IMG/VR virus record: IMGVR_UViG_3300042350_004528 | Coordinates: 62,001-126,000 of that record | Reading direction: 5' to 3' (one strand) | Length of the DNA stretch: 64,000 nucleotides | In this document: positions 35,651 to 51,618 of the stretch, piece after piece | How positions within the stretch are numbered: the first letter of the stretch is position 1 | How the letters are laid out: each line of letters opens with the position of its first letter | Position numbers and translations under genes: made by a program | Notes under the pieces: generated by a model | Told to the model about the DNA's origin: nothing | Database searches by the model: none | Seen by the model: the letters and a program-made list of their open reading frames with translations, nothing else

Positions 35651-35671
35651 ATTATTAGAAAATAATTAATT

Positions 35672-35703
35672 AAAGGGGTTAAGTGATTAACCCCTTTTTT
35701 TTT
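35672..35703 (+). terminator. Rho-independent terminator
   Basis: AAAGGGGTTAA-GTGA-TTAACCCCTTT followed by a long T-run. Confidence 0.9.
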
Positions 35704-35728
35704 GCGTAATATTTCTTATTATTGTTAT

Positions 35729-36124
35729 ATGAATGAAATAGTTTGGGTAAACGGAACTTTTGACATCTTACATAACGGTCATTTTAGATTAATTAACTAC
35801 GCATCGTCATTAGGTAAACTAATAATCGGAATTGATAGTGATGCCAGAGTGAAAAAAATAAAAGGTGATAATAGGCCATACCATAACCAATTTGAAAGGC
35901 ACTATAATTTAATATCGATAAAGGGGGTTTATAACGTATTAATCTTTGATAGTGATGAAGAGTTAAAAGAATTAATAAAAATGAACTCACCAGACTACTT
36001 TGTTATTGGTTCTGATTATAAAGATAAAAAAATAATTGGCGCTGAATACGCGAAAGAAATGATCTTCTTTAACAGAATAAATTTCTCAACAACAGAAATC
36101 TTAAAATTATGGGACATAAAATAA
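35729..36124 (+). CDS. Nucleotidyltransferase, RfaE/HldE domain II / TagD-like
   Basis: [14 protein letters not shown] (HxGH) and GIDSD..VK..KG..RP; start moved to ATG 35729. Confidence 0.85.
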
Positions 36125-36510
36125 AACCAAAAGTCATCAATGCAAAAGAATGCGAAAGTTGTAATATACCAAAAGGCTGGGGGCACGAAATTATTTTTGA
36201 AAATAATGAACTATATTGTGGTAAATTACTTTGTTTTAAAGCTGGGGCTAAGTTTTCTATGCATTACCACATGATAAAAGATGAAGCGTGGTATGTTAAA
36301 GAAGGTAAATTCATTTACAGGTGGATTGACACGGATAATGCCGATATTCATGAAATTGAATTACGAGAGGGCGACAGTGTTAGGCAATTACCAGGTCAAC
36401 CGCACCAATTAGAAGCGGTTACCGATGGTATCGTTTTTGAGGTTTCAACACAACATTTTGATTATGATTCCTATCGCGTATTAAAAGGTGATTCAAATAA
36501 ACCCCAATAA
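36109..36510 (+). CDS. Cupin, sugar-phosphate isomerase-like
   Basis: PKGWGHE...CGKLL...SMHYH..KDE.WYV...H cupin metal-binding motifs. Confidence 0.8.
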
Positions 36511-36524
36511 AATTAATAAAATAC

Positions 36525-36555
36525 TTGTTTTTTAGCGTATTTTTTTTTATTATTG
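36525..36555 (+). promoter_or_regulatory. Variant host-type promoter TTG-N20-TATTATTG
   Basis: 20-nt spacing, 22 nt before the ATG at 36578. Confidence 0.45.
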
Positions 36556-36577
36556 GGTAAAACCCAGTTATAAATAT

Positions 36578-37804
36578 ATGGCAAAAATTAAAATTTTAGT
36601 AGCCCCAGGTGATAAAGCGGGTTCTGGTAAATTTAGATGCGTTGATCCGCATGTAAACCTACAAAATAATTTTTCTGACGAATTTTTTATCGATATTGAT
36701 TATGCGATAGATTTTAATAATGTGGAGTATTTAAAAAAGTATGATGTTATTTTTATACACAGAATACCGCAGCATAAACACAAAGAAGCTGTAAACATAA
36801 TTAAAAATTTAAAGAAAATTGGATTAAAGGTAATCATTGATACAGATGACCACTGGAATTTAGATCCATCACATGGTTTATATCATTCAGCTAAAAGGGA
36901 AAATATCTCAGGTATTTTAGTTGAGTGTATTAAAATGGCCGACATGGTTACAGTACCAACTACAATTTTAGCTGATGAAGTTAAAAAATACAATAAAAAT
37001 GTTTTTGTTTTACCAAACGCAATTGACCCAAATGAAGAACAATTTAAACCTAAAAAAACAGAATCTAATTTAATTAGATTTGGTTGGTTAGGTGGTTCTT
37101 CCCACATAAAAGATATTGAGTTATTAAAAGGTTTAGGTAATACGCAAAAATCTTTTGATAAAAAAACACAATTTGTTTTATGTGGATTTGATACCCGAGG
37201 TACTGTTCAAATGTTGGATCCAAACACAGGTGAGATAAAACAAAGACCAATGCAACCACAAGAAACAACCTGGTTTATGTATGAGTTGTTTTTAACCGAC
37301 AGTTATAAAAACTTAGAGGGTGATGCTGATTATTTAAAATACTTAGTTTCGTTTGAAGATGATCCAAATTACAGTGTGTTAAATAAACCTTATCGTAGAA
37401 TTTGGACAAAACCCATTAGTCAATATGCGACTGGGTATAATCATTTTGACATTGCGTTGGCCCCACTTAACGACTCTCAATTTAATAAGTATAAATCTCA
37501 ACTTAAAGTGATCGAAGCTGGATTTCATAAAAAAGCTTTGATTGCTCAAAACTACGGGCCATATACGATTGATTTGATTGGCGCTATTGATAAAGGTGGT
37601 GCCTGGAACCCAAAAGGTAATTGCTTACTTGTTGAAACTTCTAAAAACCATAAACAATGGACTAAAAATGCTAAAAAATTAATTGACAATCCAGATTTAA
37701 TCACCGAACTTGGTGAAAAATTATATGAAACGGTTAAAGATAAATACGATTTAAATAACGTTACAAAATTAAGATCAGAACTATACAAAAATTTAATAAA
37801 ATGA
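36578..37804 (+). CDS. Glycosyltransferase, GT-B fold (GT4-like)
   Basis: IIDTDDHW, FGWLGGSSH, DIALAPL..SQFNKYKSQLKVIEAG. Confidence 0.85.
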   Translation: MAKIKILVAPGDKAGSGKFRCVDPHVNLQNNFSDEFFIDIDYAIDFNNVEYLKKYDVIFIHRIPQHKHKEAVNIIKNLKKIGLKVIIDTDDHWNLDPSHGLYHSAKRENISGILVECIKMADMVTVPTTILADEVKKYNKNVFVLPNAIDPNEEQFKPKKTESNLIRFGWLGGSSHIKDIELLKGLGNTQKSFDKKTQFVLCGFDTRGTVQMLDPNTGEIKQRPMQPQETTWFMYELFLTDSYKNLEGDADYLKYLVSFEDDPNYSVLNKPYRRIWTKPISQYATGYNHFDIALAPLNDSQFNKYKSQLKVIEAGFHKKALIAQNYGPYTIDLIGAIDKGGAWNPKGNCLLVETSKNHKQWTKNAKKLIDNPDLITELGEKLYETVKDKYDLNNVTKLRSELYKNLIK

Positions 37805-38373
37805 TACCAGCAGAAACAATTGAAAAAAACAAAAAAAGTTATTATAGCGCAGCTAAAGGCTATAAAGTTTGTGAATTAGAATTAGTTGACAAATTAGCTG
37901 ATATGGGTTTATTCGAAACACCCGCATCGACCATGTTAAGCCTACACAACGCATTTCCAGGTGGTTTAGTTGATCACTTGTTAAGAGTTACATCATATGC
38001 TGTTAAACTAAACGATATGTTACCAGAATCACTTAAACAACCTAAGGAAAGTGTTGTTAGGGTGAGCCTATTACACTCCATTGGTAAAATTGGGTTATAT
38101 TCATTATGTAAGAGTGAATGGCATATTAAAAACCAAGGTAAAATGTATGAATTTAACGAAGATCTAACATCAATGACAATTGGTGAAAGAAGCATTTATT
38201 ACATTATGTCCAATGGATTTGGTGGTATTTTAAGTGATATTGAATACCAAGCGATATTAAATCACGATAAGGGGTCATCGGATAAAATGTCTGAATGGCA
38301 CACATCATCTTTAGGTGAAACTTTAAAGATGGCAATAAAATTAGCTATAATGGAAGAAAAGACAAAGAAATAA
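37801..38373 (+). CDS. HD-superfamily-like protein (YhaM-like, HS instead of HD)
   Basis: HNAFPGGLVDH...LLHSIGK...AILNHD. Confidence 0.65.
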   Translation: MIPAETIEKNKKSYYSAAKGYKVCELELVDKLADMGLFETPASTMLSLHNAFPGGLVDHLLRVTSYAVKLNDMLPESLKQPKESVVRVSLLHSIGKIGLYSLCKSEWHIKNQGKMYEFNEDLTSMTIGERSIYYIMSNGFGGILSDIEYQAILNHDKGSSDKMSEWHTSSLGETLKMAIKLAIMEEKTKK

Positions 38374-38374
38374 T

Positions 38375-38980
38375 ATGAGCGGAAATAATAAAGAAAAGAC
38401 CGAATTAGAAAGATTGATGAATTTAAACGTAAATGATTTTCTAACCGATGAGGAAAAAAGTCAAATGAGCGACATTTTCAATCAAGTTGGTATGGAAGAT
38501 TGGATTTACGAGCCTGGCGATAGTTCGATGAAGTTAAAGATTAAAATCATTAATAATTCAACAAATCCAGACCCAACTTATCAAAAAATTGGCGATAGTG
38601 GGTTTGATTTTATGGCTAATTTACCTGAAGGTGAAATGATAGTGGTGGGGCCACTTAAACGAGCCCTTATACCAACTGGGTTACACTTTCAAATACCTAT
38701 TGGGTTTGAATTACAGGTCAGACCAAGGAGCGGCTTGGCGCTTAAAAATGGCATTACTGTTTTAAACACACCTGGAACTGTTGATTCTGGTTATAGAGGT
38801 GAAATAAAAATTATTTTATACAACACCGATGAAGCCCCATTTGTGGTTAGAAATGGTGACAGAATTGCGCAAGGTGTAATAGCACCAGTGCAATTCACAA
38901 AAACAACGAAATTTATACGAGTGAATAATTTAGACGAGTCTGACAGGGGAACTGGAGGATTTGGTTCAACTGGAGTTTAA
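38375..38980 (+). CDS. dut: Trimeric dUTPase
   Basis: SGFD, RPRSGLA, GTVDSGYRGEI, RIAQ, RGTGGFGSTG: all five motifs. Confidence 0.97.
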   Translation: MSGNNKEKTELERLMNLNVNDFLTDEEKSQMSDIFNQVGMEDWIYEPGDSSMKLKIKIINNSTNPDPTYQKIGDSGFDFMANLPEGEMIVVGPLKRALIPTGLHFQIPIGFELQVRPRSGLALKNGITVLNTPGTVDSGYRGEIKIILYNTDEAPFVVRNGDRIAQGVIAPVQFTKTTKFIRVNNLDESDRGTGGFGSTGV

Positions 38981-39262
38981 ATGAGAGAATATTTTAAAGC
39001 ACAGTTAGCTTATTACCCACAAATAACGGAAGAAATTTTAGATAAAATTGAATTTAAAACCGTTTGGTCTGGAAAAAGAATACAACCTGGTGATAAAGTT
39101 GTATATGCGTATGTTTATTTATTAAATACTGATGACCTTAAAGCAATCTCTTTTTTAGAAAGAGAATTACATGAAATAAGTGCTAAATTCAAATTGATCA
39201 GAGTAGAAGAAGACATTATGCCAATTTTGGCGTTTAAAGAAGATACAAAAAAAAGAGATTAA
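38981..39262 (+). CDS. Hypothetical protein
   Basis: 93-aa ORF abutting both neighbours. Confidence 0.6.
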   Translation: MREYFKAQLAYYPQITEEILDKIEFKTVWSGKRIQPGDKVVYAYVYLLNTDDLKAISFLERELHEISAKFKLIRVEEDIMPILAFKEDTKKRD

Positions 39263-39263
39263 A

Positions 39264-39935
39264 ATGGATACTTTTTCAATAACAATTGCTTTCTCAACGA
39301 GAAAAATAAATCAAGAGTATGTTGAACATGTTAAAAAATCATGTGCATGCCCAGATTTAGAGTTGTTGGTTTATGAAAACAATGGTGATAAAAGTTTAAC
39401 TGAAATTTATAATGAAGTTTTAAAAACAGCAAAAAATGATATCATTGTTTTCTGTCATGATGATTTAATTTTTGATACACCTTATTGGGGTAGAAAATTA
39501 GTTAAACATTTCAAAAGAAACCCAGATTACGGTATAATTGGAATTGCTGGTACCAACAATTTAATAAATGGTAGGTGGTGGTCGTTAAGGGAATCAATGC
39601 ACGGCATTGTCAATCATACGGATGGTAATAGAAAATGGACAAGTATGTTCTCTCAACCACAAGGCAATAAAATAAAACAAATGGTTATACTTGATGGTTT
39701 GTTTTTTGCTGTTGATAAGACAAAAATTAAACATGGTTTTGATGAGGATTTTAATGGGTTTCATTTTTACGACTTATCATTTTGCATACCAAATCATTTA
39801 GATGGTGTTAAGATTGGTGTTATAACGGATATAATGATCACACACTTATCTGTTGGTATGACAAACCAAAAATGGGAAGATAATAAAAATTTATTGGAAA
39901 AAAAATATGCGGATAAGTTTCCGATGAGAATATGA
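39264..39935 (+). CDS. Glycosyltransferase family 2-like protein
   Basis: IYN...AKNDIIVFCHDD, LDGLFFA, FHFYDLSFC. Confidence 0.8.
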   Translation: MDTFSITIAFSTRKINQEYVEHVKKSCACPDLELLVYENNGDKSLTEIYNEVLKTAKNDIIVFCHDDLIFDTPYWGRKLVKHFKRNPDYGIIGIAGTNNLINGRWWSLRESMHGIVNHTDGNRKWTSMFSQPQGNKIKQMVILDGLFFAVDKTKIKHGFDEDFNGFHFYDLSFCIPNHLDGVKIGVITDIMITHLSVGMTNQKWEDNKNLLEKKYADKFPMRI

Positions 39936-40594
39936 AAAATATTAGTGGTTTAAAAAATATCCATGTGGGTGAAGATATCTACATTTTAGCATCTGGTAAA
40001 TCTGTTGATTTTTTTGATGAAGATTTTTTTGATGGTAAAATACTTATCGGTGTTAACCAAGCGTATAAATTTACTTGGTGTGATTACCTGGTTAGAAAAG
40101 AAGTTAAATTTATTAAACAGAGTATAGAAACAGATTCCGTTGTTATTGTTTCTGAGTACGATAGTGGTAATTTAAATTCTGGTGAACAAAAGTTAAATAC
40201 AAACAAAATTGATCACCCTAATTTATATTATTTTGAACACTTGGATAATCAACATGCAAGGCTTGACACATCTGTTTTTGGTACAGATAAAATTGTCGTT
40301 AGTTTCTCAACTATTACATCAGCCATACACATTGCAGCCTACATGGGCGCTAAAAACATTATTTTAATTGGTCATGATTGTGGTACGATTGATGGCGAAA
40401 TGACGTTTAAAGGGTATTATGATTCCATTAAAGATACACCATGGGTGAGCTGGGATCAGTATAAATCTTGGTTAAAAATAATTGAAGGGCAAACGATAGA
40501 AGTTAAAAAACAAGTAAAAAAACACTATGGTGCTAATGTTGTATCAATGCTACCGTTTGTTTCACTGAACCTAGAAAATCATTTATATTTGTGA
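39932..40594 (+). CDS. DUF115/Maf-like (sialyltransferase-fold) protein
   Basis: GEDIYILASGKS...IGVNQA...STITSAIHIAAYMGAKNIILIGHD. Confidence 0.7.
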   Translation: MKNISGLKNIHVGEDIYILASGKSVDFFDEDFFDGKILIGVNQAYKFTWCDYLVRKEVKFIKQSIETDSVVIVSEYDSGNLNSGEQKLNTNKIDHPNLYYFEHLDNQHARLDTSVFGTDKIVVSFSTITSAIHIAAYMGAKNIILIGHDCGTIDGEMTFKGYYDSIKDTPWVSWDQYKSWLKIIEGQTIEVKKQVKKHYGANVVSMLPFVSLNLENHLYL

Positions 40595-41223
40595 TAAAAT
40601 ACATTATACCAGCAAGACGAAACTCAAAAGGGTTCCCATTTAAAAATAGAAAATTAATAAATTATACGTTAGATAATTTACCAAAAAACGTATATGACGA
40701 TGTTATTTTAACTACCGATGATGAAAAGTTATTGGAAATTGGTTTAGAATATGGTATAAAATGTATTAATAGAAATCCAAGTTTAGCTTTAGATAAAACT
40801 TCAACTAAAGAAGTTATGGATGACCTAAAGTTTCAGGGTATTATTACTAACACAGACATTGTTGTTATGTTATATTTAACATATCCGCAAAGAAATTGGT
40901 TAGATATAACTAACGCTTTACAGTTTTTTGATAATAAAAATGCAAAAAGCCTTTTGTGTAAAAAAGAAATAACAACAACCCACCCATATTTATATTTACT
41001 TGAAGTTGGTGATTTTAAGGGTAAACAATTAATCCCCCACAATCTATACAGAAGGCAAGATTATCCAAAAGTTTTTGAAATATCTCACTTTATATCGATT
41101 TTTAAAGTCAGTGAACTCAAAAATTTAAATAATAATCTTTATAATAACGACACCGTTTTTTATCCAATTGATGATATAATTGATGTTGACACTGATAAAG
41201 ATTTAGAAAGGTTTTTAGAATAA
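40591..41223 (+). CDS. neuA: Acylneuraminate (CMP-nonulosonate) cytidylyltransferase
   Basis: IIPARRNSKGFPFKN, LTTDD, LYLTYPQR, IDVDTDKD; GTG start. Confidence 0.88.
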   Translation: MIKYIIPARRNSKGFPFKNRKLINYTLDNLPKNVYDDVILTTDDEKLLEIGLEYGIKCINRNPSLALDKTSTKEVMDDLKFQGIITNTDIVVMLYLTYPQRNWLDITNALQFFDNKNAKSLLCKKEITTTHPYLYLLEVGDFKGKQLIPHNLYRRQDYPKVFEISHFISIFKVSELKNLNNNLYNNDTVFYPIDDIIDVDTDKDLERFLE

Positions 41224-42374
41224 TGGGTATTTTTATAAAAAATAAAACAAAAAGGGTACAAAAAGATGACACAAAACAACCAGTGTTAACTAATACTGCA
41301 ACTAATAAATCTTTAATAGGTGAAGAGGTTGTCGTTGCTGAAAAAAAAGCAATAAAAAAAGGATTTGGGGATAAAAAAATTGTAAACAAAGAACCAGTAA
41401 AGGCCACAATTAATTCTGTGGCGGTTGGTAAAGAGGAAAAAAAGTCCGTGTTGTTATTTGAAAACAACGAAAAAAATGAACCGACCACAAATTCATTAAT
41501 TAATAAAATTAATAAATCTTCAGGTAGAAATTCAATTTTTGACAAAGTTGTTGCCCCAGAAATTAAAAATTCAAATGTAGCTAAATCAAATGACAAAGTT
41601 GTTAACGACATTTATGATAAAGCTAGAAAAAATATTAGTTTTATAAAAAATAAAAATAATAAGTACTATGATTTTGTTTTCACTAAAGGGTACATAAATG
41701 AAAAAGATATTAAACATGTTAACACTGAACTAGATAAACAATTAAATAATTTAAAAATAAATCCGTCAACAATGGATTTATACTTTTTTAAATCGTTTAT
41801 AAAAGATAAAACAATCGCTCTTATAGCTAACTCGTCTGATTTATTAAATAAAAAACTTGGTGCGGAAATAGATTCTCATGACATTGTAGTTAGATTTAAT
41901 TCATATAAAATATTAAAAGAGGATACTGGGGAAAAATTAACTATACATGTTAGCATTTATTTACAAAATGAAAATTTAAATAATTTTGCACCTATTAGAT
42001 TTATCCTTTCGGGTAATAAAATAAACTGGGCTAAAAAAATATTAACATTAAATAAGTTTAACCAATCTACAATATTAAAGTATAATCACCACTCAACATT
42101 ACCAGGTAATTTTAGAGACGATTCGCCAACCACAACGGGATTCGCCACCTTAATTTTACTACTTAAAATTGGTGGTTTTCAAAAAATTAATATGTTTGGT
42201 TTTGATTTTTATCAAAACGGTAATGATAGTTTATTTAGAACGGACGTTGGTATGGAATCCCCAATATCTACCGTTCATGATTATTTCTTCGAAAAAGAAT
42301 TTATGATGGAATATTCATATGAATATGACGATAAAAAAAATATAATTACTTTTTATGATTATAGCACATTTTAA
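41223..42374 (+). CDS. GT29-like sialyltransferase with a Lys-rich N-terminal extension
   Basis: Sialylmotif L (IALIANS..LL....G.EID.HD.VVRFN), motif S (PTTG...MFGFD) and VS (HxxxxE). Confidence 0.75.
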   Translation: MGIFIKNKTKRVQKDDTKQPVLTNTATNKSLIGEEVVVAEKKAIKKGFGDKKIVNKEPVKATINSVAVGKEEKKSVLLFENNEKNEPTTNSLINKINKSSGRNSIFDKVVAPEIKNSNVAKSNDKVVNDIYDKARKNISFIKNKNNKYYDFVFTKGYINEKDIKHVNTELDKQLNNLKINPSTMDLYFFKSFIKDKTIALIANSSDLLNKKLGAEIDSHDIVVRFNSYKILKEDTGEKLTIHVSIYLQNENLNNFAPIRFILSGNKINWAKKILTLNKFNQSTILKYNHHSTLPGNFRDDSPTTTGFATLILLLKIGGFQKINMFGFDFYQNGNDSLFRTDVGMESPISTVHDYFFEKEFMMEYSYEYDDKKNIITFYDYSTF

Positions 42375-43203: not shown

Positions 43204-43204
43204 A

Positions 43205-45240: not shown

Positions 45241-45824
45241 AAAGAGCATTAATTGGTGCTGGTGGTTTTGCACGTGAAATTAAATCGCATATTGGTGATG
45301 AATCAATGATATGTTTTGTTGATGATAGTTACTATGTTGGTGATACCTATACGTTACCATTAAGTCACTTTAATCCAAATGAATATGAGGTATTGATTGC
45401 TATCGGAGACCCACGTGCAAGATATGAGATAAGTAATCGCTTACCTAAAGATACTAAATATTTTACGCATATTGATAAACGAGCAAATATATTAGATGAA
45501 AATATTGAAATTGGCGAGGGTAGTATTATTTGTGCTGGCTGCATATTAACAACAAATATTAAAATAGGTAAACATGCCCATTTAAATTTACAAACAACAA
45601 TCGGGCATGATACAACCATAGGTAACTTTTTTACAACAGCCCCTGGAGCAAAAATATCTGGTAATTGTGTAATACACGATTTAGTTTACATTGGGACAAA
45701 CGCTTCTGTTAGAGAAAAAATAACGATCCATAGCTTAACAACAATAGGTTTAAATGCTGGTGTGGTAAAAGATATAACTGAACCAGGTGTTTACGGCGGA
45801 ACGCCATGTAAAAAAATTAAATAA
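45237..45824 (+). CDS. NeuD/PglD-family sugar acetyltransferase (hexapeptide repeats)
   Basis: LIGAGGFARE, AIGDP..R, left-handed beta-helix repeats, YGGTP. Confidence 0.9.
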   Translation: MKRALIGAGGFAREIKSHIGDESMICFVDDSYYVGDTYTLPLSHFNPNEYEVLIAIGDPRARYEISNRLPKDTKYFTHIDKRANILDENIEIGEGSIICAGCILTTNIKIGKHAHLNLQTTIGHDTTIGNFFTTAPGAKISGNCVIHDLVYIGTNASVREKITIHSLTTIGLNAGVVKDITEPGVYGGTPCKKIK

Positions 45825-45825
45825 T

Positions 45826-46440
45826 ATGCAAAATACAGTAGAATCTTTAAATTTAATTAAAAAAATATCAGATGAGATTAATAATATGACATTTCATCAC
45901 CATTATTATGTTTTATATGATATAGCTAAAGAATTTGGAACCTCACCAATTAACTATGTTGAAATCGGTTGTTATGCTGGGGGCTCCGCTTGTCTTATGC
46001 TACAAAGGCCAAATACTAACGTAATTAGTATTGATTTAGGTGTACCAATTAAACCAGAAGTAGTTAAAAATAATGTAAAAAAATTAAATATTTTAAATAA
46101 CAATTACAATTATATACAAGGTAACTCACAAAAAAATGAAACGGTTAGTGAGTTAAAAAAATTGGTTGAATTGATAGATATTTTATTTATTGACGGTGAC
46201 CATAGTTATAATGGTGTTATTAACGATTTTAATTTGTATTCTAAAATGGTAAAACCAGGTGGTTATATTATTTTTGATGATTATAACGACAAACAACATA
46301 GCCCTCAAGTTAAAGTAGCTGTTGACGACTTATTAAAAAATAACTATGAGTATGAAATATTTGGTACATTACCAAATATTTTTGGCGCTAGGCCTAGTGA
46401 ATTAAAAGAGGGTAATTGTTTTATAATTAAAAAAAAATAA
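45826..46440 (+). CDS. Class I SAM-dependent methyltransferase (likely glycan O-methyltransferase)
   Basis: YVEIGCYAGGS, LFIDGDHSY, GGYIIFDDY; start moved to ATG 45826. Confidence 0.85.
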   Translation: MQNTVESLNLIKKISDEINNMTFHHHYYVLYDIAKEFGTSPINYVEIGCYAGGSACLMLQRPNTNVISIDLGVPIKPEVVKNNVKKLNILNNNYNYIQGNSQKNETVSELKKLVELIDILFIDGDHSYNGVINDFNLYSKMVKPGGYIIFDDYNDKQHSPQVKVAVDDLLKNNYEYEIFGTLPNIFGARPSELKEGNCFIIKKK

Positions 46441-46441
46441 T

Positions 46442-47122
46442 ATGTTAGCAATTGTCATATCCACGTATCAAAGAAATGATGGTACAACACCCATTCATTT
46501 AACCAAAGCATTAACTTCGATTAAAAATCAAACATACCAAAATTATATGGTATTTTTAATTGGCGATCGCTATGATAATAATGATGAGTTTATAAGATTA
46601 GCGACATCAATAATTGATTCTGATAAAATGGTGTTTGTTAATTTACCAAATGCTGTTGAAAGAGAAAAATATCCGTTTGGTGATGTACGTCTGTGGTCAT
46701 CTGGCGGCGTAAATGCAGTTAATTTCGGTATTAAACTTGCTTTGGAACAAAATTATAATTATATTTGTAGACTAGATCACGATGACTGGTGGGCGCCAGA
46801 ACATTTGGATTTAATAAAAGATAAATTAAACGAAGATCATATAATAATAGCAACGAAAGGTATGCATTTCACTGATAAAATATTACCTGTAAAAGATAGT
46901 AACCCATTCTACCCTAAAAGTTCAGATTTATTACATTCGTCTGTTTGTATAAATTTTAAAAAAACTCCGTTAAGGTATCGCGATGTTTTTGCCGAAGAAG
47001 GTAGACCTTATGCGGCTGATGCTGATTTATGGGATAGATTGTCTTATTATATGGTAAAAAACAATAAAACAGGTTATTTAATAAACAAGGTAACGTGTTA
47101 TCATAGTAATGAAAGAAGATGA
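46442..47122 (+). CDS. Glycosyltransferase family 2
   Basis: IVISTYQR, SIKNQTY, RLDHDDWW. Confidence 0.85.
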   Translation: MLAIVISTYQRNDGTTPIHLTKALTSIKNQTYQNYMVFLIGDRYDNNDEFIRLATSIIDSDKMVFVNLPNAVEREKYPFGDVRLWSSGGVNAVNFGIKLALEQNYNYICRLDHDDWWAPEHLDLIKDKLNEDHIIIATKGMHFTDKILPVKDSNPFYPKSSDLLHSSVCINFKKTPLRYRDVFAEEGRPYAADADLWDRLSYYMVKNNKTGYLINKVTCYHSNERR

Positions 47123-47126
47123 CTAA

Positions 47127-47972
47127 ATGAAAAAGGTAAAAATAATAGCGGAAATAGGGATTAATCACAATGGCGATATTGAAATTGCCAAACAATTAAT
47201 TATGGTGGCGAAAGCGGCTGGATGTGATTACGTAAAATTTCAGAAGAGAAACCCAGATGTGTGTGTTCCAGAAGACCAAAAAAATAAAATTCGCCAAACG
47301 CCATGGGGTGAAATGACATATCTGGAATACAAATGGAGAACTGAATTTAATTATGAACAATACTCTGAAATTGATGAGTTTTGCAAACAAATCGGTATAA
47401 AATGGTTTGTGTCTGTTTGGGACAAAGATAGCGTAGAGTTTATGGATATCTTTAGAAGATTAGGTAAAGCCTACGATGGTACAATGAAAATACCATCAGC
47501 GTTGATTACGGACTTAGAACTTTGTAAATACGCAAGAGCCAATTGTGATAAATTAATTATTTCAACTGGAATGAGTACTGAAAAAGAGGTTAGAGCCTGT
47601 ATTAGTACCTGCAATCCAGATGTTGTTATGCACACAAACTCAACTTACCCATGTCCTGTTGAAGAATTAAATTTGAATTACATAAATTGGCTTAAAAGTT
47701 GGTACCCAGGCTTAGATATAGGATATAGTGGTCACGAGTATGGTTTAGTTACAACATTTGCAACAATACCTATGGGTGTCACTTGGATTGAAAGACATAT
47801 CACCTTGGATAGAAATATGTGGGGTTCCGATCACTCAGCTTCAATAGAACCATCTGGTTTATTCAAGCTAGTTAAAGGTATACGTGACATTGAGTCATCT
47901 TTAAGTATCCCAATGAAACCTAGAGAAGTTTTTGGCGGGGAATTAGCTAAACAAAAAAGCTTGAGGAAATAA
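47127..47972 (+). CDS. neuB: Nonulosonic acid synthase (NeuB/PseI/LegI/Kdn-9-P synthase family); lacks the C-terminal AFP-like domain
   Basis: IIAEIGINHNGD, VKFQ, IISTGM, MHTNSTYP, GYSGHE, IERHITLD...GSDH. Confidence 0.95.
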   Translation: MKKVKIIAEIGINHNGDIEIAKQLIMVAKAAGCDYVKFQKRNPDVCVPEDQKNKIRQTPWGEMTYLEYKWRTEFNYEQYSEIDEFCKQIGIKWFVSVWDKDSVEFMDIFRRLGKAYDGTMKIPSALITDLELCKYARANCDKLIISTGMSTEKEVRACISTCNPDVVMHTNSTYPCPVEELNLNYINWLKSWYPGLDIGYSGHEYGLVTTFATIPMGVTWIERHITLDRNMWGSDHSASIEPSGLFKLVKGIRDIESSLSIPMKPREVFGGELAKQKSLRK

Positions 47973-48298
47973 TGAACATTTACGTAGACGTAGATAACAC
48001 AATAACCGAAACTTCTGGTATGGATTATCAGAATGCTAAACCTATATACGCGAAAATCTCAATCATAAATAAATTATACGATTTAGGCCATACAATTACT
48101 TATTGGACAGCTAGGGGTTCCATTTCAGGTATTGACTATTATTCACTCACGAAATTACAACTAGATTCGTGGGGTGTAAAATATCACAATTTCATGGTTG
48201 GAAAACCAGCTTTTGATCTTTTAATTGATGATAAAACAATAAACAACATTAATGAAAACCTTTTTACATGGGCAACCAAAGAAGAAGAAAAAAACTAA
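47972..48298 (+). CDS. Capless HAD phosphatase (capsule-biosynthesis type)
   Basis: YVDVDNT (DxD), WTARG, GKP, LIDDK. Confidence 0.8.
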   Translation: MNIYVDVDNTITETSGMDYQNAKPIYAKISIINKLYDLGHTITYWTARGSISGIDYYSLTKLQLDSWGVKYHNFMVGKPAFDLLIDDKTINNINENLFTWATKEEEKN

Positions 48299-49005
48299 CA
48301 CCAGAAGAAGAGCTAGAGGCTTTTGAGGCTATTAATCGAGGCCATTCTGGTAATATATTTGATAAAATTAAAATTGATATTAAATCAAAAACACCAAATC
48401 AAAAAAAATTAGTAAACGAAATAAAAGCCAAGGAGATTGTAATATGCTCTGGCTTACCAGGTACTGGTAAAACATTTTTGTCTTGTGCCGTTGCTTTAGA
48501 ATTATTAAAGCACGACCCAAGGTATAAAAAAATTGTTATTGTTAAATCCGTTACTACTTTAAAAGATGAAGAGATTGGGTTTTTGAAAGGAACCATGAAA
48601 GAAAAAATGGAACCGTTTATGTACTCTTTTATGCATAATTTTGAAAAAGTAATCGGTAAGTATAACGTGGAAGCTTTAAGGGCCGCTGGAATGATAGAAG
48701 AGCTCCCAATAGCATACATGAGGGGTATTAATATAGATAATTCAATTACAATCATCGATGAAGCACAAAATATATCAATAGATAACATAAGAACCATAAT
48801 GACACGTCTCGGTGAAAATTCAAAAATGATTTTTCTTGGGGATGAGAACCAAATTGATATGAAGAAAAAGTCTGAAAGTTCATTGAACTTCATCATCAAT
48901 AAGTTTAAAGATTTTGAAGAGGTTGGTACTGTTGTTCTGGGTGAAGACGATGTCGTTAGAAACCCACTAATCAAGAAAATTGAACAGATTTTCAGAGAAA
49001 AGTAA
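48268..49005 (+). CDS. phoH: PhoH-family ATPase
   Basis: GLPGTGKT, YMRG, IIDEAQN, TRLGENSK, GDENQID, VVRNPL. Confidence 0.95.
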   Translation: MGNQRRRKKLTPEEELEAFEAINRGHSGNIFDKIKIDIKSKTPNQKKLVNEIKAKEIVICSGLPGTGKTFLSCAVALELLKHDPRYKKIVIVKSVTTLKDEEIGFLKGTMKEKMEPFMYSFMHNFEKVIGKYNVEALRAAGMIEELPIAYMRGINIDNSITIIDEAQNISIDNIRTIMTRLGENSKMIFLGDENQIDMKKKSESSLNFIINKFKDFEEVGTVVLGEDDVVRNPLIKKIEQIFREK

Positions 49006-49040
49006 TAATAACTGTTTACTTTTTACACTTTAATCATAAG

Positions 49041-49087
49041 TTTGCAGAAATAACGCAAAAATAAACGTTTTGCAAAAATAATGCAAA
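49041..49087 (+). promoter_or_regulatory. Two tandem 19-bp operator-like inverted repeats TTTGCA(G/A)AAATAA(C/T)GCAAA
   Basis: 49041-49059 and 49069-49087, overlapping and following TAAGTTTG (49037-49044) and ending 3 nt before the ATG. Confidence 0.55.
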
Positions 49088-49090
49088 CTT

Positions 49091-49726
49091 ATGATTATTG
49101 GTATTACTATTAACAACATTGTTAGAGACCACATAAGCCAACTTAAAAAGGCTTATACCCTATTAACAGAAGAGGAGGCTATTGAGCCAATTAACCCCTT
49201 TGATTTGGAATCTTCTTTTCCAAATAAAACATCAACAGAATTGATACAGGAGTTTACTGTAACCGAAACTAGTGATGAAATGCCATTAAATGAAGTTAAC
49301 GAAGAATTTAATGTGTATGAGTTTATGTACCACGAAGCCTCATTTGAGATCTTTGGTAGATCTGAGGAATCTATTGATGGTATTGTTCGCAAATTAAAAG
49401 AATACGAAAAAAAATTAAAGGTGAATATTGTTTTAATTAACAAGGAGTCGCCGAGATCAAAGTGTGCTACATTATTCTTTTTATCAAAAAACGGATTTGA
49501 TTTTGATCGAATTTTATTCCCAAAAGATTATAAGAATTTTTGGGATGAAATTGATGTGTTAATAACCGACAACCCAAAGGCACTCAAGAAAAAACCTAAA
49601 AATAAGTATTCAATAAAGGTTAAAAATGATTTTAACATTGACATAAAATCTGATTTTACTATTATTGACTTAAATGATTATAAAACTTTAAAAAGTATAA
49701 TAAAAATGATAAAAGAAAAAGTTTAA
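49091..49726 (+). CDS. NT5C-like HAD-fold protein with a degenerate catalytic motif
   Basis: IIGITINNIVRD in place of IGIDxDxVxRD; DVLITDNP. Confidence 0.55.
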   Translation: MIIGITINNIVRDHISQLKKAYTLLTEEEAIEPINPFDLESSFPNKTSTELIQEFTVTETSDEMPLNEVNEEFNVYEFMYHEASFEIFGRSEESIDGIVRKLKEYEKKLKVNIVLINKESPRSKCATLFFLSKNGFDFDRILFPKDYKNFWDEIDVLITDNPKALKKKPKNKYSIKVKNDFNIDIKSDFTIIDLNDYKTLKSIIKMIKEKV

Positions 49727-49727
49727 A

Positions 49728-50804
49728 ATGGAAAAAATAAACGAGACATTAAAAAACATCGAAAGTGCGATCGAAAAAGTAAAAAACAAAGAAAGTAAAA
49801 TCGTATTTTTATCACCAGACACAAAAGGTACCGCTAGAGCGAGTGTGTCGTACATTTACCGACAAGCCTTAATATTAAAAAATGCGGGCTACACAATTAA
49901 CATTTTACATGAAAAAAATGACTACATCAAAGTTGGTAGTTGGTTGGGTGAGGATTACGACAATTTAGAGCACAAGTCAATCGAAAACAATGATTTGACT
50001 GTCGGGCCTCAGGATATTATTATTGTTCCTGAAATATATGGAAATGTTTTTGAACAAATATTACAACTACCTGTACAAAAAGTTATTCTTGCCCAATCTT
50101 ATGATTATTTGTTAGATAGTTTTTCACCTGGTAAATCCTGGTTAGATTTTGATGTTATGACTTGTTTGACAACATCAAAAACTTTATCCGATACTATAAG
50201 CGAATTAGTACCTTCAAGTAATATTGAATTTGTTAACCCAGGAATCGCTGAATGTTTTTCACCAAGCGAAAAACCGCAAATGCCTGTCATTGCAATTCAT
50301 TGTAGAGATCAAAGAAAAGCGGCAAAAATAATTAAAAGTTTTTATCTAAAATACCCATTATATCGTTTTATTTCTTTTAAAGATATGCACGGAATGACTG
50401 AAAGTGATTTTGCAAAAAATTTAAAAGAATGTGCGTTATCTGTTTGGGTTGACGATGATAGTACATTTGGTACATTTCCTGTTGAATCTATGAAATGCAA
50501 TGTTCCTGTTATCGGTAAAGTGCCTAACATTATTCCAGAGTGGATGAATGATGACAACGGTATTTGGGTTTACGATGAAAATCAAATTGCTGATTTAGCA
50601 TTTAATTATATAAAAAATTGGATGGAAGATAGCTTACCAGAAAACCTATTAAAAGTAAGTGAAACTGTTGATGGTAAGTACACCATGGAATTATTTGAAA
50701 AAGCAACAATTGAGGTCTATGACACAATGTTTAAAAAGTGTCTGGATAGACTTAATAGAATAAAAGAAACCTTTGAAAAAACACTAGAAACTAATGAAAA
50801 CTAA
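49728..50804 (+). CDS. Glycosyltransferase, GT-B-like
   Basis: IIIVPEIYG, VWVDDDSTFGTFPVESMKCNVPVIG. Confidence 0.75.
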   Translation: MEKINETLKNIESAIEKVKNKESKIVFLSPDTKGTARASVSYIYRQALILKNAGYTINILHEKNDYIKVGSWLGEDYDNLEHKSIENNDLTVGPQDIIIVPEIYGNVFEQILQLPVQKVILAQSYDYLLDSFSPGKSWLDFDVMTCLTTSKTLSDTISELVPSSNIEFVNPGIAECFSPSEKPQMPVIAIHCRDQRKAAKIIKSFYLKYPLYRFISFKDMHGMTESDFAKNLKECALSVWVDDDSTFGTFPVESMKCNVPVIGKVPNIIPEWMNDDNGIWVYDENQIADLAFNYIKNWMEDSLPENLLKVSETVDGKYTMELFEKATIEVYDTMFKKCLDRLNRIKETFEKTLETNEN

Positions 50805-51618
50805 TATAGACTTAACAGTTGTTATCCCCGTACACTCAATTGCGGATGAAAAATTTAATGAATTATTGAGCGGTGCGTTAAATAGTATTGAAAATAATAA
50901 TATACACCCATCAAACGTAATGATTGTTAGATGCGGTTGTTCTGAAGTTAAAGAAGTTTTGAAAAAATTTGATTTTTCAAAATATTCTTTTCATGTAACA
51001 TTACTTGAAAATAAAACAGGAAAATCATTTCAAAACCAAATAAACGAAGCTGCAAAAAATATAGAAACAAAATATTTTAGCTTTTTAGAATTTGATGACG
51101 AGTATTCAGTTAATTGGTTTAAAAATGTTAAACAATATACGGAAGCTTACCCTGAAATTGACATGTTTTTACCCATTATAACCGATGTTACAAATGAAAA
51201 TAATTTTGTTGGATTTACTAATGAAGCAGCTTGGGCTTATAATTTTTCTGATACATTAGGCCAGATTGACCATGAGGTTTTAAATGAATTCCCAAACATC
51301 AATCCAGATGGTATGGTTGTTAAAACCGAAGTCTTTAAAAATATCGGCGGTTACAAATCTTCGATTAAACTCACATTTAATTATGAATTTTTACTAAGAT
51401 TTACTAAAGGTGGTAGAAATATTATGGTTATACCTAAAATTGGTTATAAACATGTCAATATGCGACCAGGTTCTTTATTCTGGGAATATAAAAATAGTGA
51501 AATCCCAGAAATGAGAATTACACCAGAAGAAGCTAAGTTTTGGATGGAAGCTGCTAAAAAAGAATTTTTTTATACTGAAGATAGACCAATAACATACGAA
51601 GAAAATGAAACAGCTTAA
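50794..51618 (+). CDS. Glycosyltransferase family 2
   Basis: LTVVIPVH, QINEA, SFLEFDD, YEFLLR. Confidence 0.8.
   Translation: MKTNIDLTVVIPVHSIADEKFNELLSGALNSIENNNIHPSNVMIVRCGCSEVKEVLKKFDFSKYSFHVTLLENKTGKSFQNQINEAAKNIETKYFSFLEFDDEYSVNWFKNVKQYTEAYPEIDMFLPIITDVTNENNFVGFTNEAAWAYNFSDTLGQIDHEVLNEFPNINPDGMVVKTEVFKNIGGYKSSIKLTFNYEFLLRFTKGGRNIMVIPKIGYKHVNMRPGSLFWEYKNSEIPEMRITPEEAKFWMEAAKKEFFYTEDRPITYEENETA

What the first reader, a model, noticed from the sequence alone, without database searches (positions are those of the whole stretch)
35729..51618. ~16-kb phage-encoded nonulosonic acid synthesis, activation and transfer island: candidate virion self-glycosylation system
Seen: NeuB-family synthase, adjacent HAD phosphatase, NeuA-type CMP-activating enzyme, two sialyltransferase-fold proteins (GT29-like and Maf/DUF115), NeuD/PglD acetyltransferase, DegT aminotransferase, SAM methyltransferase, RfaE-like nucleotidyltransferase, cupin and about 8 GT2/GT-B glycosyltransferases. 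I found no Wzx/Wzy, ABC exporter or membrane initiating transferase, so it does not look like a captured capsule locus. Known: some mycobacteriophages and giant viruses glycosylate their virions. Inference: the phage builds a methylated/acetylated, nonulosonate-capped glycan in the cytoplasm, most simply on its own virion proteins (see Thr/Gly repeats). Alternatives are host-surface remodelling or DNA glycosylation.
Basis: partly seen in the sequence, partly recalled or inferred. Interest (0 to 1): 0.86.

Follow-up and report, generated by a model that had tools for sequence, protein, structure and literature searches.

The report
Jumbo-phage sialic-acid-type glycosylation locus
An uncultivated 299-kb freshwater-type phage carries a real gene set to make, activate and transfer a sialic-acid-like sugar (probably Kdn), sitting in a swappable slot of a glycosylation locus conserved across its phage family; what gets glycosylated is not shown.

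Summary
All + strand ORFs between 35.7 and 51.6 kb include a NeuB-family synthase, an adjoining small HAD phosphatase, a CMP-sugar synthetase, two sialyltransferase-fold proteins, NeuD/PglD-type acetyltransferase, SAM methyltransferase, a short DegT-like protein, an RfaE-like nucleotidyltransferase, a cupin and six to seven other glycosyltransferases. None has a predicted membrane helix. It is not one captured island. Four glycosyltransferases, dUTPase, an HD hydrolase and PhoH form a backbone that stays syntenic across many relatives of this T4-like jumbo phage. Between GT2_5 and PhoH lies a variable slot: nonulosonate genes here, RgpF/WbsX or pyruvyltransferase cassettes elsewhere. NeuB lacks the SAF domain. 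It is paired with a phosphatase in 72 of 80 viral loci, and with an unrelated HAD in 72 of 80 bacterial loci, which points to a 9-phosphate route, probably Kdn. The virion-glycosylation reading stays plausible but unproven. The candidate acceptor is a (G-x-T-T)16 loop in a conserved 521-aa protein. The loop is under peptide-level selection, but its length does not track the nonulosonate genes strictly, and the protein's role is unknown. Host-surface or DNA targets are not excluded. Viral neuABC clusters and four core glycosyltransferases in the possibly related 'moraphages' were already reported.

The parts
35672..35697 (.). Strong bidirectional intrinsic terminator; 5' boundary of the co-directional gene run
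   Evidence: 11-bp stem followed by a T-run. It is the only convincing terminator between 35 and 55 kb.
35702..36124 (+). RfaE/HldE domain II-like sugar-phosphate nucleotidyltransferase. A TagD-like cytidylyltransferase is not excluded.
   Evidence: PF01467 56.9 bits; TIGR02199 89.7 bits, below cut-off. Found only in the closest relatives.
36109..36510 (+). Cupin-fold protein (possible sugar isomerase or epimerase)
   Evidence: Cupin_2 33.5 bits; weak matches to lyxose isomerase, mannose-6-P isomerase and WbuC.
36578..37804 (+). Backbone glycosyltransferase 1, GT-B/GT4-like, 408 aa
   Evidence: Weak GT4/GT1 matches. A 17-sequence profile hits the GT1 C-terminal domain of PDB 5I45 at E 0.0024. 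Syntenic in 26 or more viral loci down to 45% identity.
37801..38373 (+). HD-domain phosphohydrolase-like protein (backbone; no evident glycan role)
   Evidence: phrog_28876 E 1.9e-8.
38375..38980 (+). dUTPase/dCTP-deaminase-fold enzyme (backbone; nucleotide metabolism)
   Evidence: PF00692 80 bits.
38981..39262 (+). Conserved 93-aa protein of unknown function (backbone)
   Evidence: No family hit. Syntenic in 22 loci.
39264..39935 (+). Backbone glycosyltransferase 2, GT2 (Glyco_tranf_2_5); left edge of the variable slot
   Evidence: PF13712 92 bits. Syntenic in NeuB+ and NeuB- relatives.
39932..40594 (+). 220-aa sialyltransferase-fold protein (CstII/MptE-DUF115-like); candidate nonulosonate transferase
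   Evidence: PF01973 28.7 bits, below cut-off. AF2 pLDDT 80. Foldseek hits: SteA, CstII, CstI, Pasteurella sialyltransferase, ST6Gal1, at E 2e-5 to 1e-2. Many uncultured-phage homologues, some annotated MptE-like or DUF115.
40591..41223 (+). CMP-nonulosonate synthetase (NeuA/PseF-like cytidylyltransferase)
   Evidence: PF02348 43.9 bits; TIGR03584 49.6 bits. Present in 56 of 80 viral NeuB loci.
41223..42374 (+). GT29-like sialyltransferase with a Lys-rich N-terminal leader of about 95 aa
   Evidence: PF00777 38.7 bits. Sialylmotifs L and S align to ST3Gal-I and ST6Gal-I. The leader is 42-47% identical to the N-terminus of GT8 proteins in the same slot of relatives.
42355..43203 (+). 282-aa protein that travels with the GT29-like gene; possible GT-B C-terminal-like domain
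   Evidence: No Pfam or PHROG hit. Its profile gives only E 0.17 to PglA. It accompanies the GT29-like gene in L003, L011, L016 and L018.
43115..43876 (+). GT2 glycosyltransferase (variable cassette)
   Evidence: PF00535 26.4 bits.
43877..44521 (+). Short (214 aa) DegT/LegC-like protein; function uncertain
   Evidence: PF01041 39 bits over profile positions 24-94 only. The candidate Schiff-base Lys region aligns weakly. Full-length homologues of about 210 aa occur in 17 viral loci, so it is not a pseudogene.
44518..45240 (+). 240-aa unknown protein (variable cassette; lowest GC, 23%)
   Evidence: No hits; GC.
45237..45824 (+). NeuD/PglD-family hexapeptide acetyltransferase
   Evidence: TIGR03570 157.8 bits; PglD_N plus Hexapep.
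45787..46440 (+). SAM-dependent (sugar O-) methyltransferase
   Evidence: Methyltransf_24 64 bits; CmcI and TylF families.
46442..47122 (+). GT2 glycosyltransferase (variable cassette)
   Evidence: PF00535 37.5 bits.
47127..47972 (+). NeuB-family nonulosonate synthase without the SAF domain; inferred 9-phosphate-forming (Kdn-9-P or Neu5Ac-9-P) synthase
   Evidence: PF03102 204 bits; profile positions 2-263 of 329 matched. PDB PseI, SpsE and NeuB. Coupled to a phosphatase in phages and bacteria.
47972..48298 (+). Minimal HAD-superfamily phosphatase (108 aa); inferred nonulosonate-9-phosphate phosphatase
   Evidence: DxDxT motif I; PDB 9IQW E 8e-17 and 1XPJ; TIGR01689 35 bits. Present in 72 of 80 viral NeuB loci and often abuts NeuB.
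48268..49005 (+). PhoH-like ATPase (backbone; right edge of the variable slot)
   Evidence: PF02562 194 bits.
49091..49726 (+). 211-aa conserved unknown protein (backbone)
   Evidence: No hit. Syntenic in 27 loci.
49728..50804 (+). Backbone glycosyltransferase 3, GT-B/GT1-like, 358 aa
   Evidence: Glycos_transf_1 E 6e-4; BshA/HpsO-like. Syntenic in all relatives examined.
50794..51618 (+). Backbone glycosyltransferase 4, GT2, 274 aa
   Evidence: PF00535 24 bits. Syntenic in all relatives examined.
56543..58108 (+). Conserved 521-aa protein with a (G-I/V-T-T)16 loop (aa about 183-248; DNA repeat 57083-57281). It is a candidate O-glycosylation acceptor. Its role in the virion is unproven.
   Evidence: Translation. 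Loop length ranges from 1 to about 17 units in relatives. 12-bp repeat with 71% DNA matches. 272 synonymous against 69 nonsynonymous codon-pair differences. No family or structure match.

Best explanation
The locus is a phage-owned cytoplasmic glycosylation system with two layers.

**Layer 1, the backbone (core to the phage family).** It has four soluble glycosyltransferases (36578, 39264, 49728, 50794). They are interleaved with an HD hydrolase, dUTPase and PhoH, and are followed by a sigma-like gene and the T4-like morphogenesis genes.

**Layer 2, a variable slot between GT2_5 and PhoH.** Different lineages hold different sugar cassettes here. In this phage the slot encodes a self-contained nonulosonate branch:
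1. The SAF-less NeuB condenses PEP with a 6-phospho-hexose, most likely Man-6-P giving Kdn-9-P; alternatively ManNAc-6-P giving Neu5Ac-9-P.
2. The adjoining 108-aa HAD phosphatase removes the 9-phosphate.
3. The NeuA-like enzyme makes the CMP-sugar.
4. The GT29-like and/or CstII-like proteins transfer it as a cap.
5. The NeuD-type acetyltransferase, the methyltransferase, the short DegT-like protein and two GT2s tailor or extend the glycan.

**Most likely acceptor.** A phage protein made late in infection. The best candidate is the Thr-rich (G-x-T-T)n loop of the conserved 521-aa protein 5 kb downstream. That would give an anionic, strain-variable glycan coat on the particle.

**Shown:** gene content, intactness, solubility, synteny, the variable slot, and the NeuB-phosphatase coupling.
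**Inferred:** the substrate, the order of steps and the acceptor.
For: - Enzyme identities.
- Backbone against slot: relatives at 45-99% identity keep the same gene order, and only the slot content changes. In L004, L007, L009, L010 and L115 it holds a GT8(+GT29-like) fusion and methyltransferases with the NeuA/NeuB/HAD genes (the CstII-like gene is absent from L007). In L104, L105 and L107 it holds RgpF+WbsX without NeuB (L110 keeps RgpF only). In L114 it holds a 668-aa glycosyltransferase, a pyruvyltransferase and a methyltransferase without NeuB.
- Slot GC is 28.1% against 31% for the backbone.
- 9-phosphate route: the phosphatase is present in 72 of 80 viral NeuB loci and often abuts NeuB.
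- The 80 closest bacterial NeuB homologues (49-57% identity) lack the phage-type HAD. Yet 72 of 80 have a different HAD, or a NeuA-HAD fusion, nearby, and at least 56 have it within 300 bp. The same need is met by non-orthologous phosphatases.
- Literature: the phosphorylated route is the one used for Kdn in B. thetaiotaomicron and P. parvum and for Neu5Ac in humans (PMC6200933). Streptomyces walls carry Kdn polymers (PMC11481543). S. coelicolor has a NeuE/NeuA/NeuB-like wall-polymer operon (PMC3479208).
- Cytoplasmic action: no membrane helix in any island protein, and no exporter in the window.
- Acceptor hint: the repeat is kept at peptide level despite codon divergence. Its length varies from 1 to 17 units among relatives. 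It lies in a core gene among neck, terminase and portal genes.
- Precedent: glycosylated mycobacteriophage virions (Freeman 2023, as cited in PMC12619734).
Against: - No biochemical or expression data exist, and no cultured relative is known.
- The NeuB substrate is not determined. NCBIfam scores are below the cut-offs for both NeuB and PseI.
- The 521-aa protein has no recognisable fold or family, so calling it a virion protein rests on gene position alone.
- Repeat length does not track the nonulosonate genes strictly. L022/P0056 is NeuB+ without a repeat. L112/L114 is NeuB- with 13 units.
- The major capsid protein has no Ser/Thr-rich tail like the glycosylated mycobacteriophage proteins.
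- Soluble glycosyltransferases could equally act on host lipid-linked intermediates.
- The backbone sits beside dUTPase and an HD hydrolase, which would also fit a DNA-modification role for some of the transferases.
Confidence: 0.45

Rival explanations
1. Host-surface remodelling. The soluble phage enzymes feed CMP-nonulosonate and extra sugars into the host's own lipid-linked LPS, capsule, S-layer or flagellin glycosylation and export machinery during infection. This changes the cell surface, for example to block superinfection or adsorption of released progeny.
For: - This is the usual reading of viral LPS/capsule-type auxiliary genes, including viral neuA/neuB/neuC clusters in Lake Biwa viral genomes (10.1101/655167).
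- Glycosyltransferases of envelope pathways are commonly soluble or peripheral, so searches do not exclude it.
- Cassette-like diversity in the slot resembles O-antigen and capsule locus diversity.
Against: - There is no initiating transferase, flippase, polymerase, ligase or exporter in 64 kb.
- The four-transferase backbone is a core feature across a deep phage lineage whose members probably infect different hosts with different envelope pathways.
- The closest bacterial NeuB homologues are only 49-57% identical and use a different phosphatase, so this is not a recent host capture.
Confidence: 0.25
2. DNA hypermodification. Some or all of the transferases decorate hydroxymethyl-pyrimidines in phage DNA with an oligosaccharide, possibly capped by the nonulosonate, to evade restriction and CRISPR.
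For: - The phage has T4-like morphogenesis genes, and T4-like phages glucosylate DNA.
- The backbone GT-B gene is followed directly by an HD hydrolase and a dUTPase/dCTP-deaminase-fold gene.
- The GT29-like and GT8 proteins share a Lys-rich leader that could bind a polyanion.
- Virus glycosyltransferases that put diverse glycans on DNA have been reported (Pyle 2024, as cited in PMC12619734).
Against: - No dCMP/dUMP hydroxymethylase or thymidylate-synthase-like gene, and no match to T4 alpha- or beta-glucosyltransferase families, appears in the window.
- I know of no reported nonulosonate on DNA (my own knowledge, not checked with a tool).
- Eight or nine transferases plus tailoring enzymes is far more than known DNA systems use.
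- Only 64 of 299 kb were seen, so the pathway could lie elsewhere.
Confidence: 0.07
3. Glycosylation of other, non-virion targets: phage or host cytoplasmic proteins, or production of a free or soluble glycoconjugate. The Thr repeat would be unrelated, for example a flexible spacer.
For: - The imperfect association between the repeat and the nonulosonate genes.
- The role of the 521-aa protein is unknown.
Against: - There is no positive evidence for any specific alternative target.
- A core, diversifying glycan locus is most easily explained by an exposed surface.
Confidence: 0.12

Closest known systems
Kdn pathway of Bacteroides thetaiotaomicron (BT1714 synthase, BT1713 phosphatase, CMP-Kdn synthetase) and Prymnesium parvum; animal NANS/NANP/CMAS route
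   Same: A three-step logic: a NeuB-family synthase acts on a 6-phospho-hexose, a HAD phosphatase follows, then a cytidylyltransferase (PMC6200933). Here the three genes are conserved together in phages, and the equivalent trio occurs in the nearest bacterial homologues.
   Different: The phage phosphatase is a 108-aa HAD of the TIGR01689/9IQW type, not the KdsC-like type. The synthase lacks the SAF domain. The substrate has not been tested. The system is encoded by a virus.
Streptomyces NeuE/NeuA/NeuB-like wall-polymer operon (SCO4879-4881) and Kdn teichulosonic acid
   Same: Among the closest cellular homologues of the phage NeuB, at about 50% identity. Same SAF-less length. The synthase is adjacent to a NeuA, here fused to a HAD domain, and to a putative transferase. 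Streptomyces walls contain Kdn polymers (PMC11481543, PMC3479208).
   Different: In Streptomyces it builds a cell-wall polymer that is exported and ligated by host machinery. No such machinery is seen in the phage window.
Virion glycosylation in mycobacteriophages (Freeman et al. 2023), chloroviruses and mimiviruses
   Same: Virus-encoded soluble glycosyltransferases that act in the cytoplasm or virus factory on structural proteins. The glycan shields or alters the particle surface.
   Different: - Mycobacteriophages use 1-3 transferases and host nucleotide sugars, and modify C-terminal extensions of capsid and tail-tube proteins.
- Here there are 8-9 transferases and a complete nonulosonate branch.
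- There is no Ser/Thr tail on the capsid protein.
- The acceptor is unproven.
Maf / FlmG flagellin nonulosonate O-glycosyltransferases
   Same: They transfer CMP-pseudaminic or CMP-legionaminic acid to Ser/Thr of a protein in the cytoplasm. The DUF115/MptE-like catalytic fold is related to CstII, as for ORF 39932.
   Different: The phage protein is only 220 aa, without the flanking substrate-binding domains. It scores below the Pfam cut-off, and no Maf structure was among the top 50 fold matches listed.
Viral neuA/neuB/neuC 'auxiliary metabolic gene' clusters in lake viromes (Okazaki et al., 10.1101/655167) and the four core glycosyltransferases of 'moraphages' (PMC12619734)
   Same: - Uncultivated freshwater phages that carry nonulosonate genes.
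- A 200-307 kb lineage with T4-like structural genes, PhoH and four core glycosyltransferase orthogroups.
- That matches the backbone seen here on a 299-kb contig.
   Different: - Those reports list the genes only.
- None describes the NeuB-phosphatase coupling, the GT29-like or CstII-like transferases, the variable slot or a candidate acceptor.
- Membership of this contig in the moraphages could not be checked, because no sequences were at hand.

Membership tests
NeuB family (PF03102) nonulosonate synthases | TIM-barrel NeuB domain above the family threshold | tested here: met
   204 bits against a cut-off of 22. PDB PseI E 2e-27, SpsE, NeuB.
Canonical bacterial NeuB/PseI/LegI | C-terminal SAF (antifreeze-like) domain, and a score above the equivalog cut-off | tested here: not met
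   The protein has 281 aa and matches profile positions 2-263 of 329. Scores of 202 and 149 bits fall below the cut-offs of 400 and 340. PDB alignments stop before the SAF domain.
9-phosphate-route synthases (Kdn-9-P / Neu5Ac-9-P synthase type) | Works with a dedicated sugar-phosphate phosphatase; uses Man-6-P or ManNAc-6-P | tested here: inconclusive
   Genetic coupling to a HAD phosphatase is strong in viruses (72 of 80) and in the nearest bacteria (72 of 80). Substrate use cannot be tested in silico.
HAD-superfamily phosphatases | Motif I DxDxT, plus the Thr/Ser and DD motifs | tested here: met
   N-terminal D-V-D-N-T, then T-A-R-G, then I-D-D-K, aligned to PDB 9IQW (E 8e-17) and 1XPJ.
CMP-nonulosonate synthetases (CTP_transf_3) | Pfam domain above threshold | tested here: met
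   43.9 bits against a cut-off of 22.6. The best NCBIfam match is PseF, below its cut-off. Sugar specificity was not tested.
GT29 sialyltransferases | Pfam PF00777 above threshold; sialylmotifs L and S | tested here: met
   38.7 bits against a cut-off of 23. The L motif aligns to ST3Gal-I and ST6Gal-I. The S-motif region aligns only in a non-significant second stretch (score -3.3) to ST3Gal-I.
GT29 sialyltransferases | Motifs III and VS with the catalytic His; conserved disulfides | not tested
Maf (motility-associated factor) protein nonulosonate transferases | DUF115/MptE-like domain above threshold, with flanking flagellin-binding domains | tested here: not met
   28.7 bits, below the cut-off of 34.6. 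Only 220 aa. The profile finds no PDB homologue. The fold resembles CstII, CstI and SteA at TM about 0.45. It is sialyltransferase-like, but not shown to be Maf.
Capsule / O-antigen biosynthesis loci | Initiating membrane transferase, Wzx/Wzy or ABC transporter, export proteins | tested here: not met
   No hydrophobic segment of 1.6 or more in island proteins. No polytopic ORF on coding strands in 64 kb. No such Pfam hits.
Mycobacteriophage-type virion glycosylation | Ser/Thr-rich C-terminal extension on the capsid or tail-tube subunit, next to the transferase genes | tested here: not met
   The capsid protein of the same contig (L230:12452-14038) and the tube protein (15714-16202) have no such tail. 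An internal Thr repeat exists instead in the 521-aa protein.
T4-type DNA glucosylation | dCMP hydroxymethylase plus an alpha/beta-glucosyltransferase family protein | tested here: not met
   Neither was found in the window. The other 235 kb of the contig were not examined.
'Moraphage' jumbo-phage lineage (PMC12619734) | 200-307 kb aquatic phages with T4-like structural genes, PhoH and four core glycosyltransferase orthogroups | not testable with these tools
   The features agree: a 299-kb contig, T4-like genes, PhoH, and four syntenic transferases. No moraphage sequence was available for comparison.

The most novel reading that the evidence does not exclude
The phage makes its own 'sialomucin'. 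A Thr-rich (G-x-T-T)n stalk on a particle protein is O-glycosylated in the cytoplasm and capped with a phage-made, methylated or acetylated Kdn-type sugar. The variable slot acts as a phage 'serotype locus': Kdn cassette, pyruvyl cassette or rhamnan-type cassette. It would diversify the particle surface much as O-antigen loci diversify bacteria.
Probability: 0.3. Interest if true: 0.8.

Novelty: new variant of a known kind. Interest (0 to 1): 0.6.

Why it matters
- As far as I know (not checked with a tool here), virus-made glycans on bacteriophage particles are documented for mycobacteriophages only, and those use simple sugars.
- A nonulosonate-capped, strain-variable coat on a widespread freshwater jumbo-phage lineage would extend that to sialic-acid chemistry. 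It would bear on how particles avoid host receptors, grazers, aggregation or decay.
- The work also defines a compact viral module of three genes (SAF-less NeuB, mini-HAD, NeuA). The module appears sufficient to make a CMP-nonulosonate from central metabolites.
- The module is common in viral contigs: at least 117 relatives in IMG/VR. It is almost absent from GenBank phage records: 2 of 50,697, both uncultured.
- The enzymes are small and soluble, so they can be tested directly. They may be useful for glyco-engineering.

Tried and rejected
1. Identifying the 521-aa repeat protein. Pfam and PHROGs were run on it alone and on 25 family members. A PDB profile search and tblastn against 50,697 phage records were also run. 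None gave a result. AF2 with a 10-sequence alignment gave pLDDT 49. Its Foldseek hits, generic Ig/FN3 sandwiches at TM below 0.2, are not usable.
2. 'Maf' identity of ORF 39932. A sequence and a profile search against the PDB found nothing. Only the fold-level CstII-like match stands.
3. Strict co-occurrence of the Thr repeat with NeuB. Rejected because of two counter-examples.
4. A recently captured bacterial island. Rejected. There is no near DNA match in phages. The best bacterial NeuB is 49-57% identical, with a different phosphatase. The backbone is syntenic across the lineage.
5. The DegT-like gene as a broken aminotransferase. Rejected. Homologues of the same length occur in 17 viral loci.
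6. Timing from promoters. The T4 late motif TATAAATA (16 found, 16.8 expected) and sigma-70-like sites (128 against 120) are at chance level.
7. Literature on PDB 9IQW. Nothing relevant was found.
8. tRNAs as a host clue. None in the window.

Full report
**1. What is there**

The window is part of IMGVR_UViG_3300042350_004528, a 298,833-bp viral contig. It encodes:
- a tail sheath, PolB, a helicase and TerL;
- T4-type baseplate and tube proteins;
- just past the window, in relatives, a T4-type portal and prohead protease.

TerL is only about 30% identical to any isolated phage; the best matches are Flavobacterium phage immuto and Microcystis phage Mel-JY01. The island DNA has no near match in 50,697 phage records.

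From a strong terminator at 35672-35697, all genes run on the + strand with almost no gaps. Details are in the parts list.

Three points needed correction:
- ORF 39932 scores below the Pfam cut-off for MptE/DUF115. Its AF2 model (pLDDT 80) does resemble the GT42 sialyltransferases CstII and CstI, SteA and ST6Gal1. It has many relatives in uncultured phages, some annotated MptE-like or DUF115. It is therefore sialyltransferase-fold, but not shown to be Maf.
- The 'DegT aminotransferase' is a 214-aa protein whose full-length homologues recur in 17 viral loci. It is a short family of uncertain function, not a decayed gene.
- An HD hydrolase, dUTPase, PhoH and four unknown ORFs lie among the sugar genes.

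The GT29 assignment is sound. It scores 38.7 bits, and sialylmotif L aligns to mammalian ST3Gal-I and ST6Gal-I. The S-motif region aligns only in a weak, non-significant stretch to ST3Gal-I.

No island protein has a membrane-helix-like segment. No polytopic membrane ORF lies on a coding strand in the 64 kb.

**2. It is a backbone plus a variable slot, not one island**

I fetched 80 viral loci with NeuB relatives, plus further loci anchored on the repeat protein and on neighbours. Relatives at 45-99% protein identity keep this order:

PolB ... GT-B (408 aa), HD hydrolase, dUTPase, 93-aa ORF, GT2_5, [slot], PhoH, 211-aa ORF, GT1-like, GT2, sigma-like ORF, 135-, 645-, 544- and 521-aa ORFs ... TerL, portal.

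Only the slot changes:

| Lineage | Slot content |
|---|---|
| This phage | CstII-like, NeuA, GT29-like, 282-aa ORF, GT2, short DegT, 240-aa ORF, NeuD, methyltransferase, GT2, NeuB, HAD |
| L004, L007, L009, L010, L115 | CstII-like (absent in L007), NeuA, a 611-631-aa GT8 protein, NeuB, FkbM and other methyltransferases, HAD |
| L104, L105, L107 (L110: RgpF only) | RgpF- and WbsX-type transferases, no NeuB |
| L114 | 668-aa glycosyltransferase, polysaccharide pyruvyltransferase, methyltransferase, no NeuB |

The slot in the window is slightly more AT-rich, 28.1% GC against 31%.

A 2025 paper describes freshwater 'moraphages': 200-307 kb, T4-like structural genes, PhoH, four core glycosyltransferase orthogroups, predicted Bacteroidota hosts (PMC12619734). 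This contig fits that description. I could not test membership.

**3. Which sugar, and how**

The NeuB homologue lacks the C-terminal SAF domain. The 108-aa ORF that abuts it is an intact minimal HAD phosphatase.

Among the 80 viral loci, 72 carry this phosphatase, often within 25 bp of NeuB, and 56 carry the NeuA-like gene.

The 80 closest bacterial homologues are 49-57% identical. They come from Chlorobi, Ignavibacteria, Anaerolineae, Streptomyces, Hymenobacter and others. None has the phage-type phosphatase. Yet 72 have a different HAD phosphatase nearby, or a NeuA-HAD fusion, and at least 56 have it within 300 bp.

Two unrelated phosphatases recruited to the same synthase clade argue that the synthase product is phosphorylated. 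That is the route from a 6-phospho-hexose, documented for Kdn in B. thetaiotaomicron and P. parvum and for Neu5Ac in animals. Ordinary bacterial NeuB needs no phosphatase (PMC6200933).

Streptomyces walls carry Kdn teichulosonic acid (PMC11481543). S. coelicolor has a NeuE/NeuA/NeuB-like wall-polymer operon (PMC3479208), matching the locus.

I therefore favour Man-6-P + PEP to Kdn-9-P, then Kdn, then CMP-Kdn. Neu5Ac remains the alternative.

No 4,6-dehydratase, NeuC/LegG or PseG was found. A full pseudaminic or legionaminic route is therefore not encoded in the window.

The NeuD-type acetyltransferase and the CmcI/TylF-type methyltransferase fit O-acetylation and O-methylation of the sugar, again by analogy.

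**4. What is glycosylated**

*For a phage protein*
- The transferases are soluble and core to the lineage.
- They run in the same direction as the morphogenesis genes that follow.
- The slot diversifies in cassette fashion, as expected for an exposed surface.

*The candidate acceptor*
- The conserved 521-aa ORF at 56543-58108 has a loop of 16 G-(I/V/T)-T-(T/S) units.
- The DNA repeat is only 71% matched with a 12-bp period. The units use all four Gly codons and three Ile codons. There are 272 synonymous against 69 nonsynonymous codon-pair differences. The peptide, not the DNA, is being conserved.
- In relatives the loop sits at the same site and ranges from 1 to about 17 units.

*The co-occurrence test*
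- Eight NeuB+ contigs have 5-17 units. NeuB- contigs of the L104, L105, L107 and L110 types have 0-2.
- L022/P0056 is NeuB+ with no repeat. I assigned P0056 to that contig by matching contig length, 154,611 bp. L112/L114 is NeuB- with 13 units and has a pyruvyltransferase cassette instead.
- The repeat is thus not tied to the nonulosonate genes as such. All lineages keep the four backbone transferases, so a link to glycosylation in general can be neither supported nor excluded.

*Against a phage-protein acceptor*
- I could not show that the 521-aa protein is a virion part. It has no Pfam, PHROG, PDB or phage-record match, and the AF2 model is poor.
- The capsid protein of this contig has no Ser/Thr-rich tail.

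*Rivals*
- Host-surface remodelling is the standard reading of viral neuABC clusters (10.1101/655167). The lack of exporters does not exclude it.
- DNA glycosylation is suggested only by the neighbouring dUTPase and HD hydrolase and by the Lys-rich leader shared by the GT29-like and GT8 proteins. No hydroxymethylase was seen in the window.

**5. Novelty**

Already reported:
- viral nonulosonate genes in lake viromes;
- four core glycosyltransferases in moraphages;
- virion glycosylation in mycobacteriophages.

Not described in the papers retrieved here:
- the NeuB-phosphatase-NeuA module as a viral unit that implies the 9-phosphate route;
- GT29-like and CstII-like transferases in this setting;
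- the backbone-plus-slot architecture;
- the selected Thr-repeat loop as a candidate acceptor.

NeuB-family genes are nearly absent from GenBank phage records. There are 2 uncultured records among 50,697, and one uncultured record for the GT29-like gene. Nothing here has been tested experimentally.

**6. Verdict**

| Question | Result |
|---|---|
| Observation | Confirmed |
| Biosynthetic reading | Well supported (about 0.85 for 'makes and transfers a CMP-activated nonulosonate'; about 0.6 for the 9-phosphate/Kdn route) |
| Acceptor: virion or other phage protein | about 0.45 |
| Acceptor: host surface | about 0.25 |
| Acceptor: other target | about 0.12 |
| Acceptor: DNA | about 0.07 |
| Novelty | New variant of a known kind |
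| Interest | 0.6 |

Noticed in passing
window 41223-41510 (aa 1-95 of the GT29-like protein); L004:7128-7415; L009:8173-8480: A Lys-rich N-terminal leader of about 95 aa is shared at 42-47% identity. It occurs on the GT29-like protein here and on the 611-631-aa GT8 proteins that occupy the same slot in relatives. The C-terminus of those GT8 proteins also weakly resembles the sialylmotif-S region. The leader may be a common targeting or acceptor-binding module.
   Followed up: partly
window 35274-35435 and 35464-35652: Two small ORFs sit just before the terminator that precedes the island. One is a 53-aa protein with two hydrophobic segments; its counterpart in L114 is annotated Phage_holin_10. 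The other is a 62-aa Cys-containing protein.
   Followed up: no
window 3173-10630 (-): A giant 2485-aa ORF with no PHROG match, next to a 932-aa protein (10647-13445, -) that carries a peptidase/endolysin-like segment. They may be tail, baseplate or tape-measure-like proteins. The moraphage paper says no tape-measure gene was recognised in that lineage.
   Followed up: no
window 16558-19650 (-): The tail sheath protein has 1030 aa, and only its C-terminal 300 aa or so match sheath families. The roughly 700-aa N-terminal part is unassigned and fairly Thr-rich (9.9% Thr).
   Followed up: no
L024, L025 (IMGVR GVMAG-M-3300027712 contigs): NeuB relatives at 66% identity sit on short contigs (5-8 kb) labelled as giant-virus MAG fragments. 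They may be phage fragments binned wrongly, or the module may be shared with giant viruses.
   Followed up: no
L114:10001-10810; L104:7959-10011: In relatives without NeuB the slot holds either a polysaccharide pyruvyltransferase, which is another way to add a carboxylate, or RgpF/WbsX-type transferases. The slot may exchange alternative anionic or neutral caps.
   Followed up: partly
window 51621-52334: A 237-aa ORF directly after the last transferase has a weak Sigma70 region-2 match (E 0.006). It is conserved in 42 of 80 NeuB loci and could be a late-transcription factor.
   Followed up: no
window 15246-15647: A 133-aa ORF with a weak Vsr (mismatch endonuclease) match lies alone on the + strand among tail genes on the - strand. 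It may be a homing-endonuclease-like insert.
   Followed up: no
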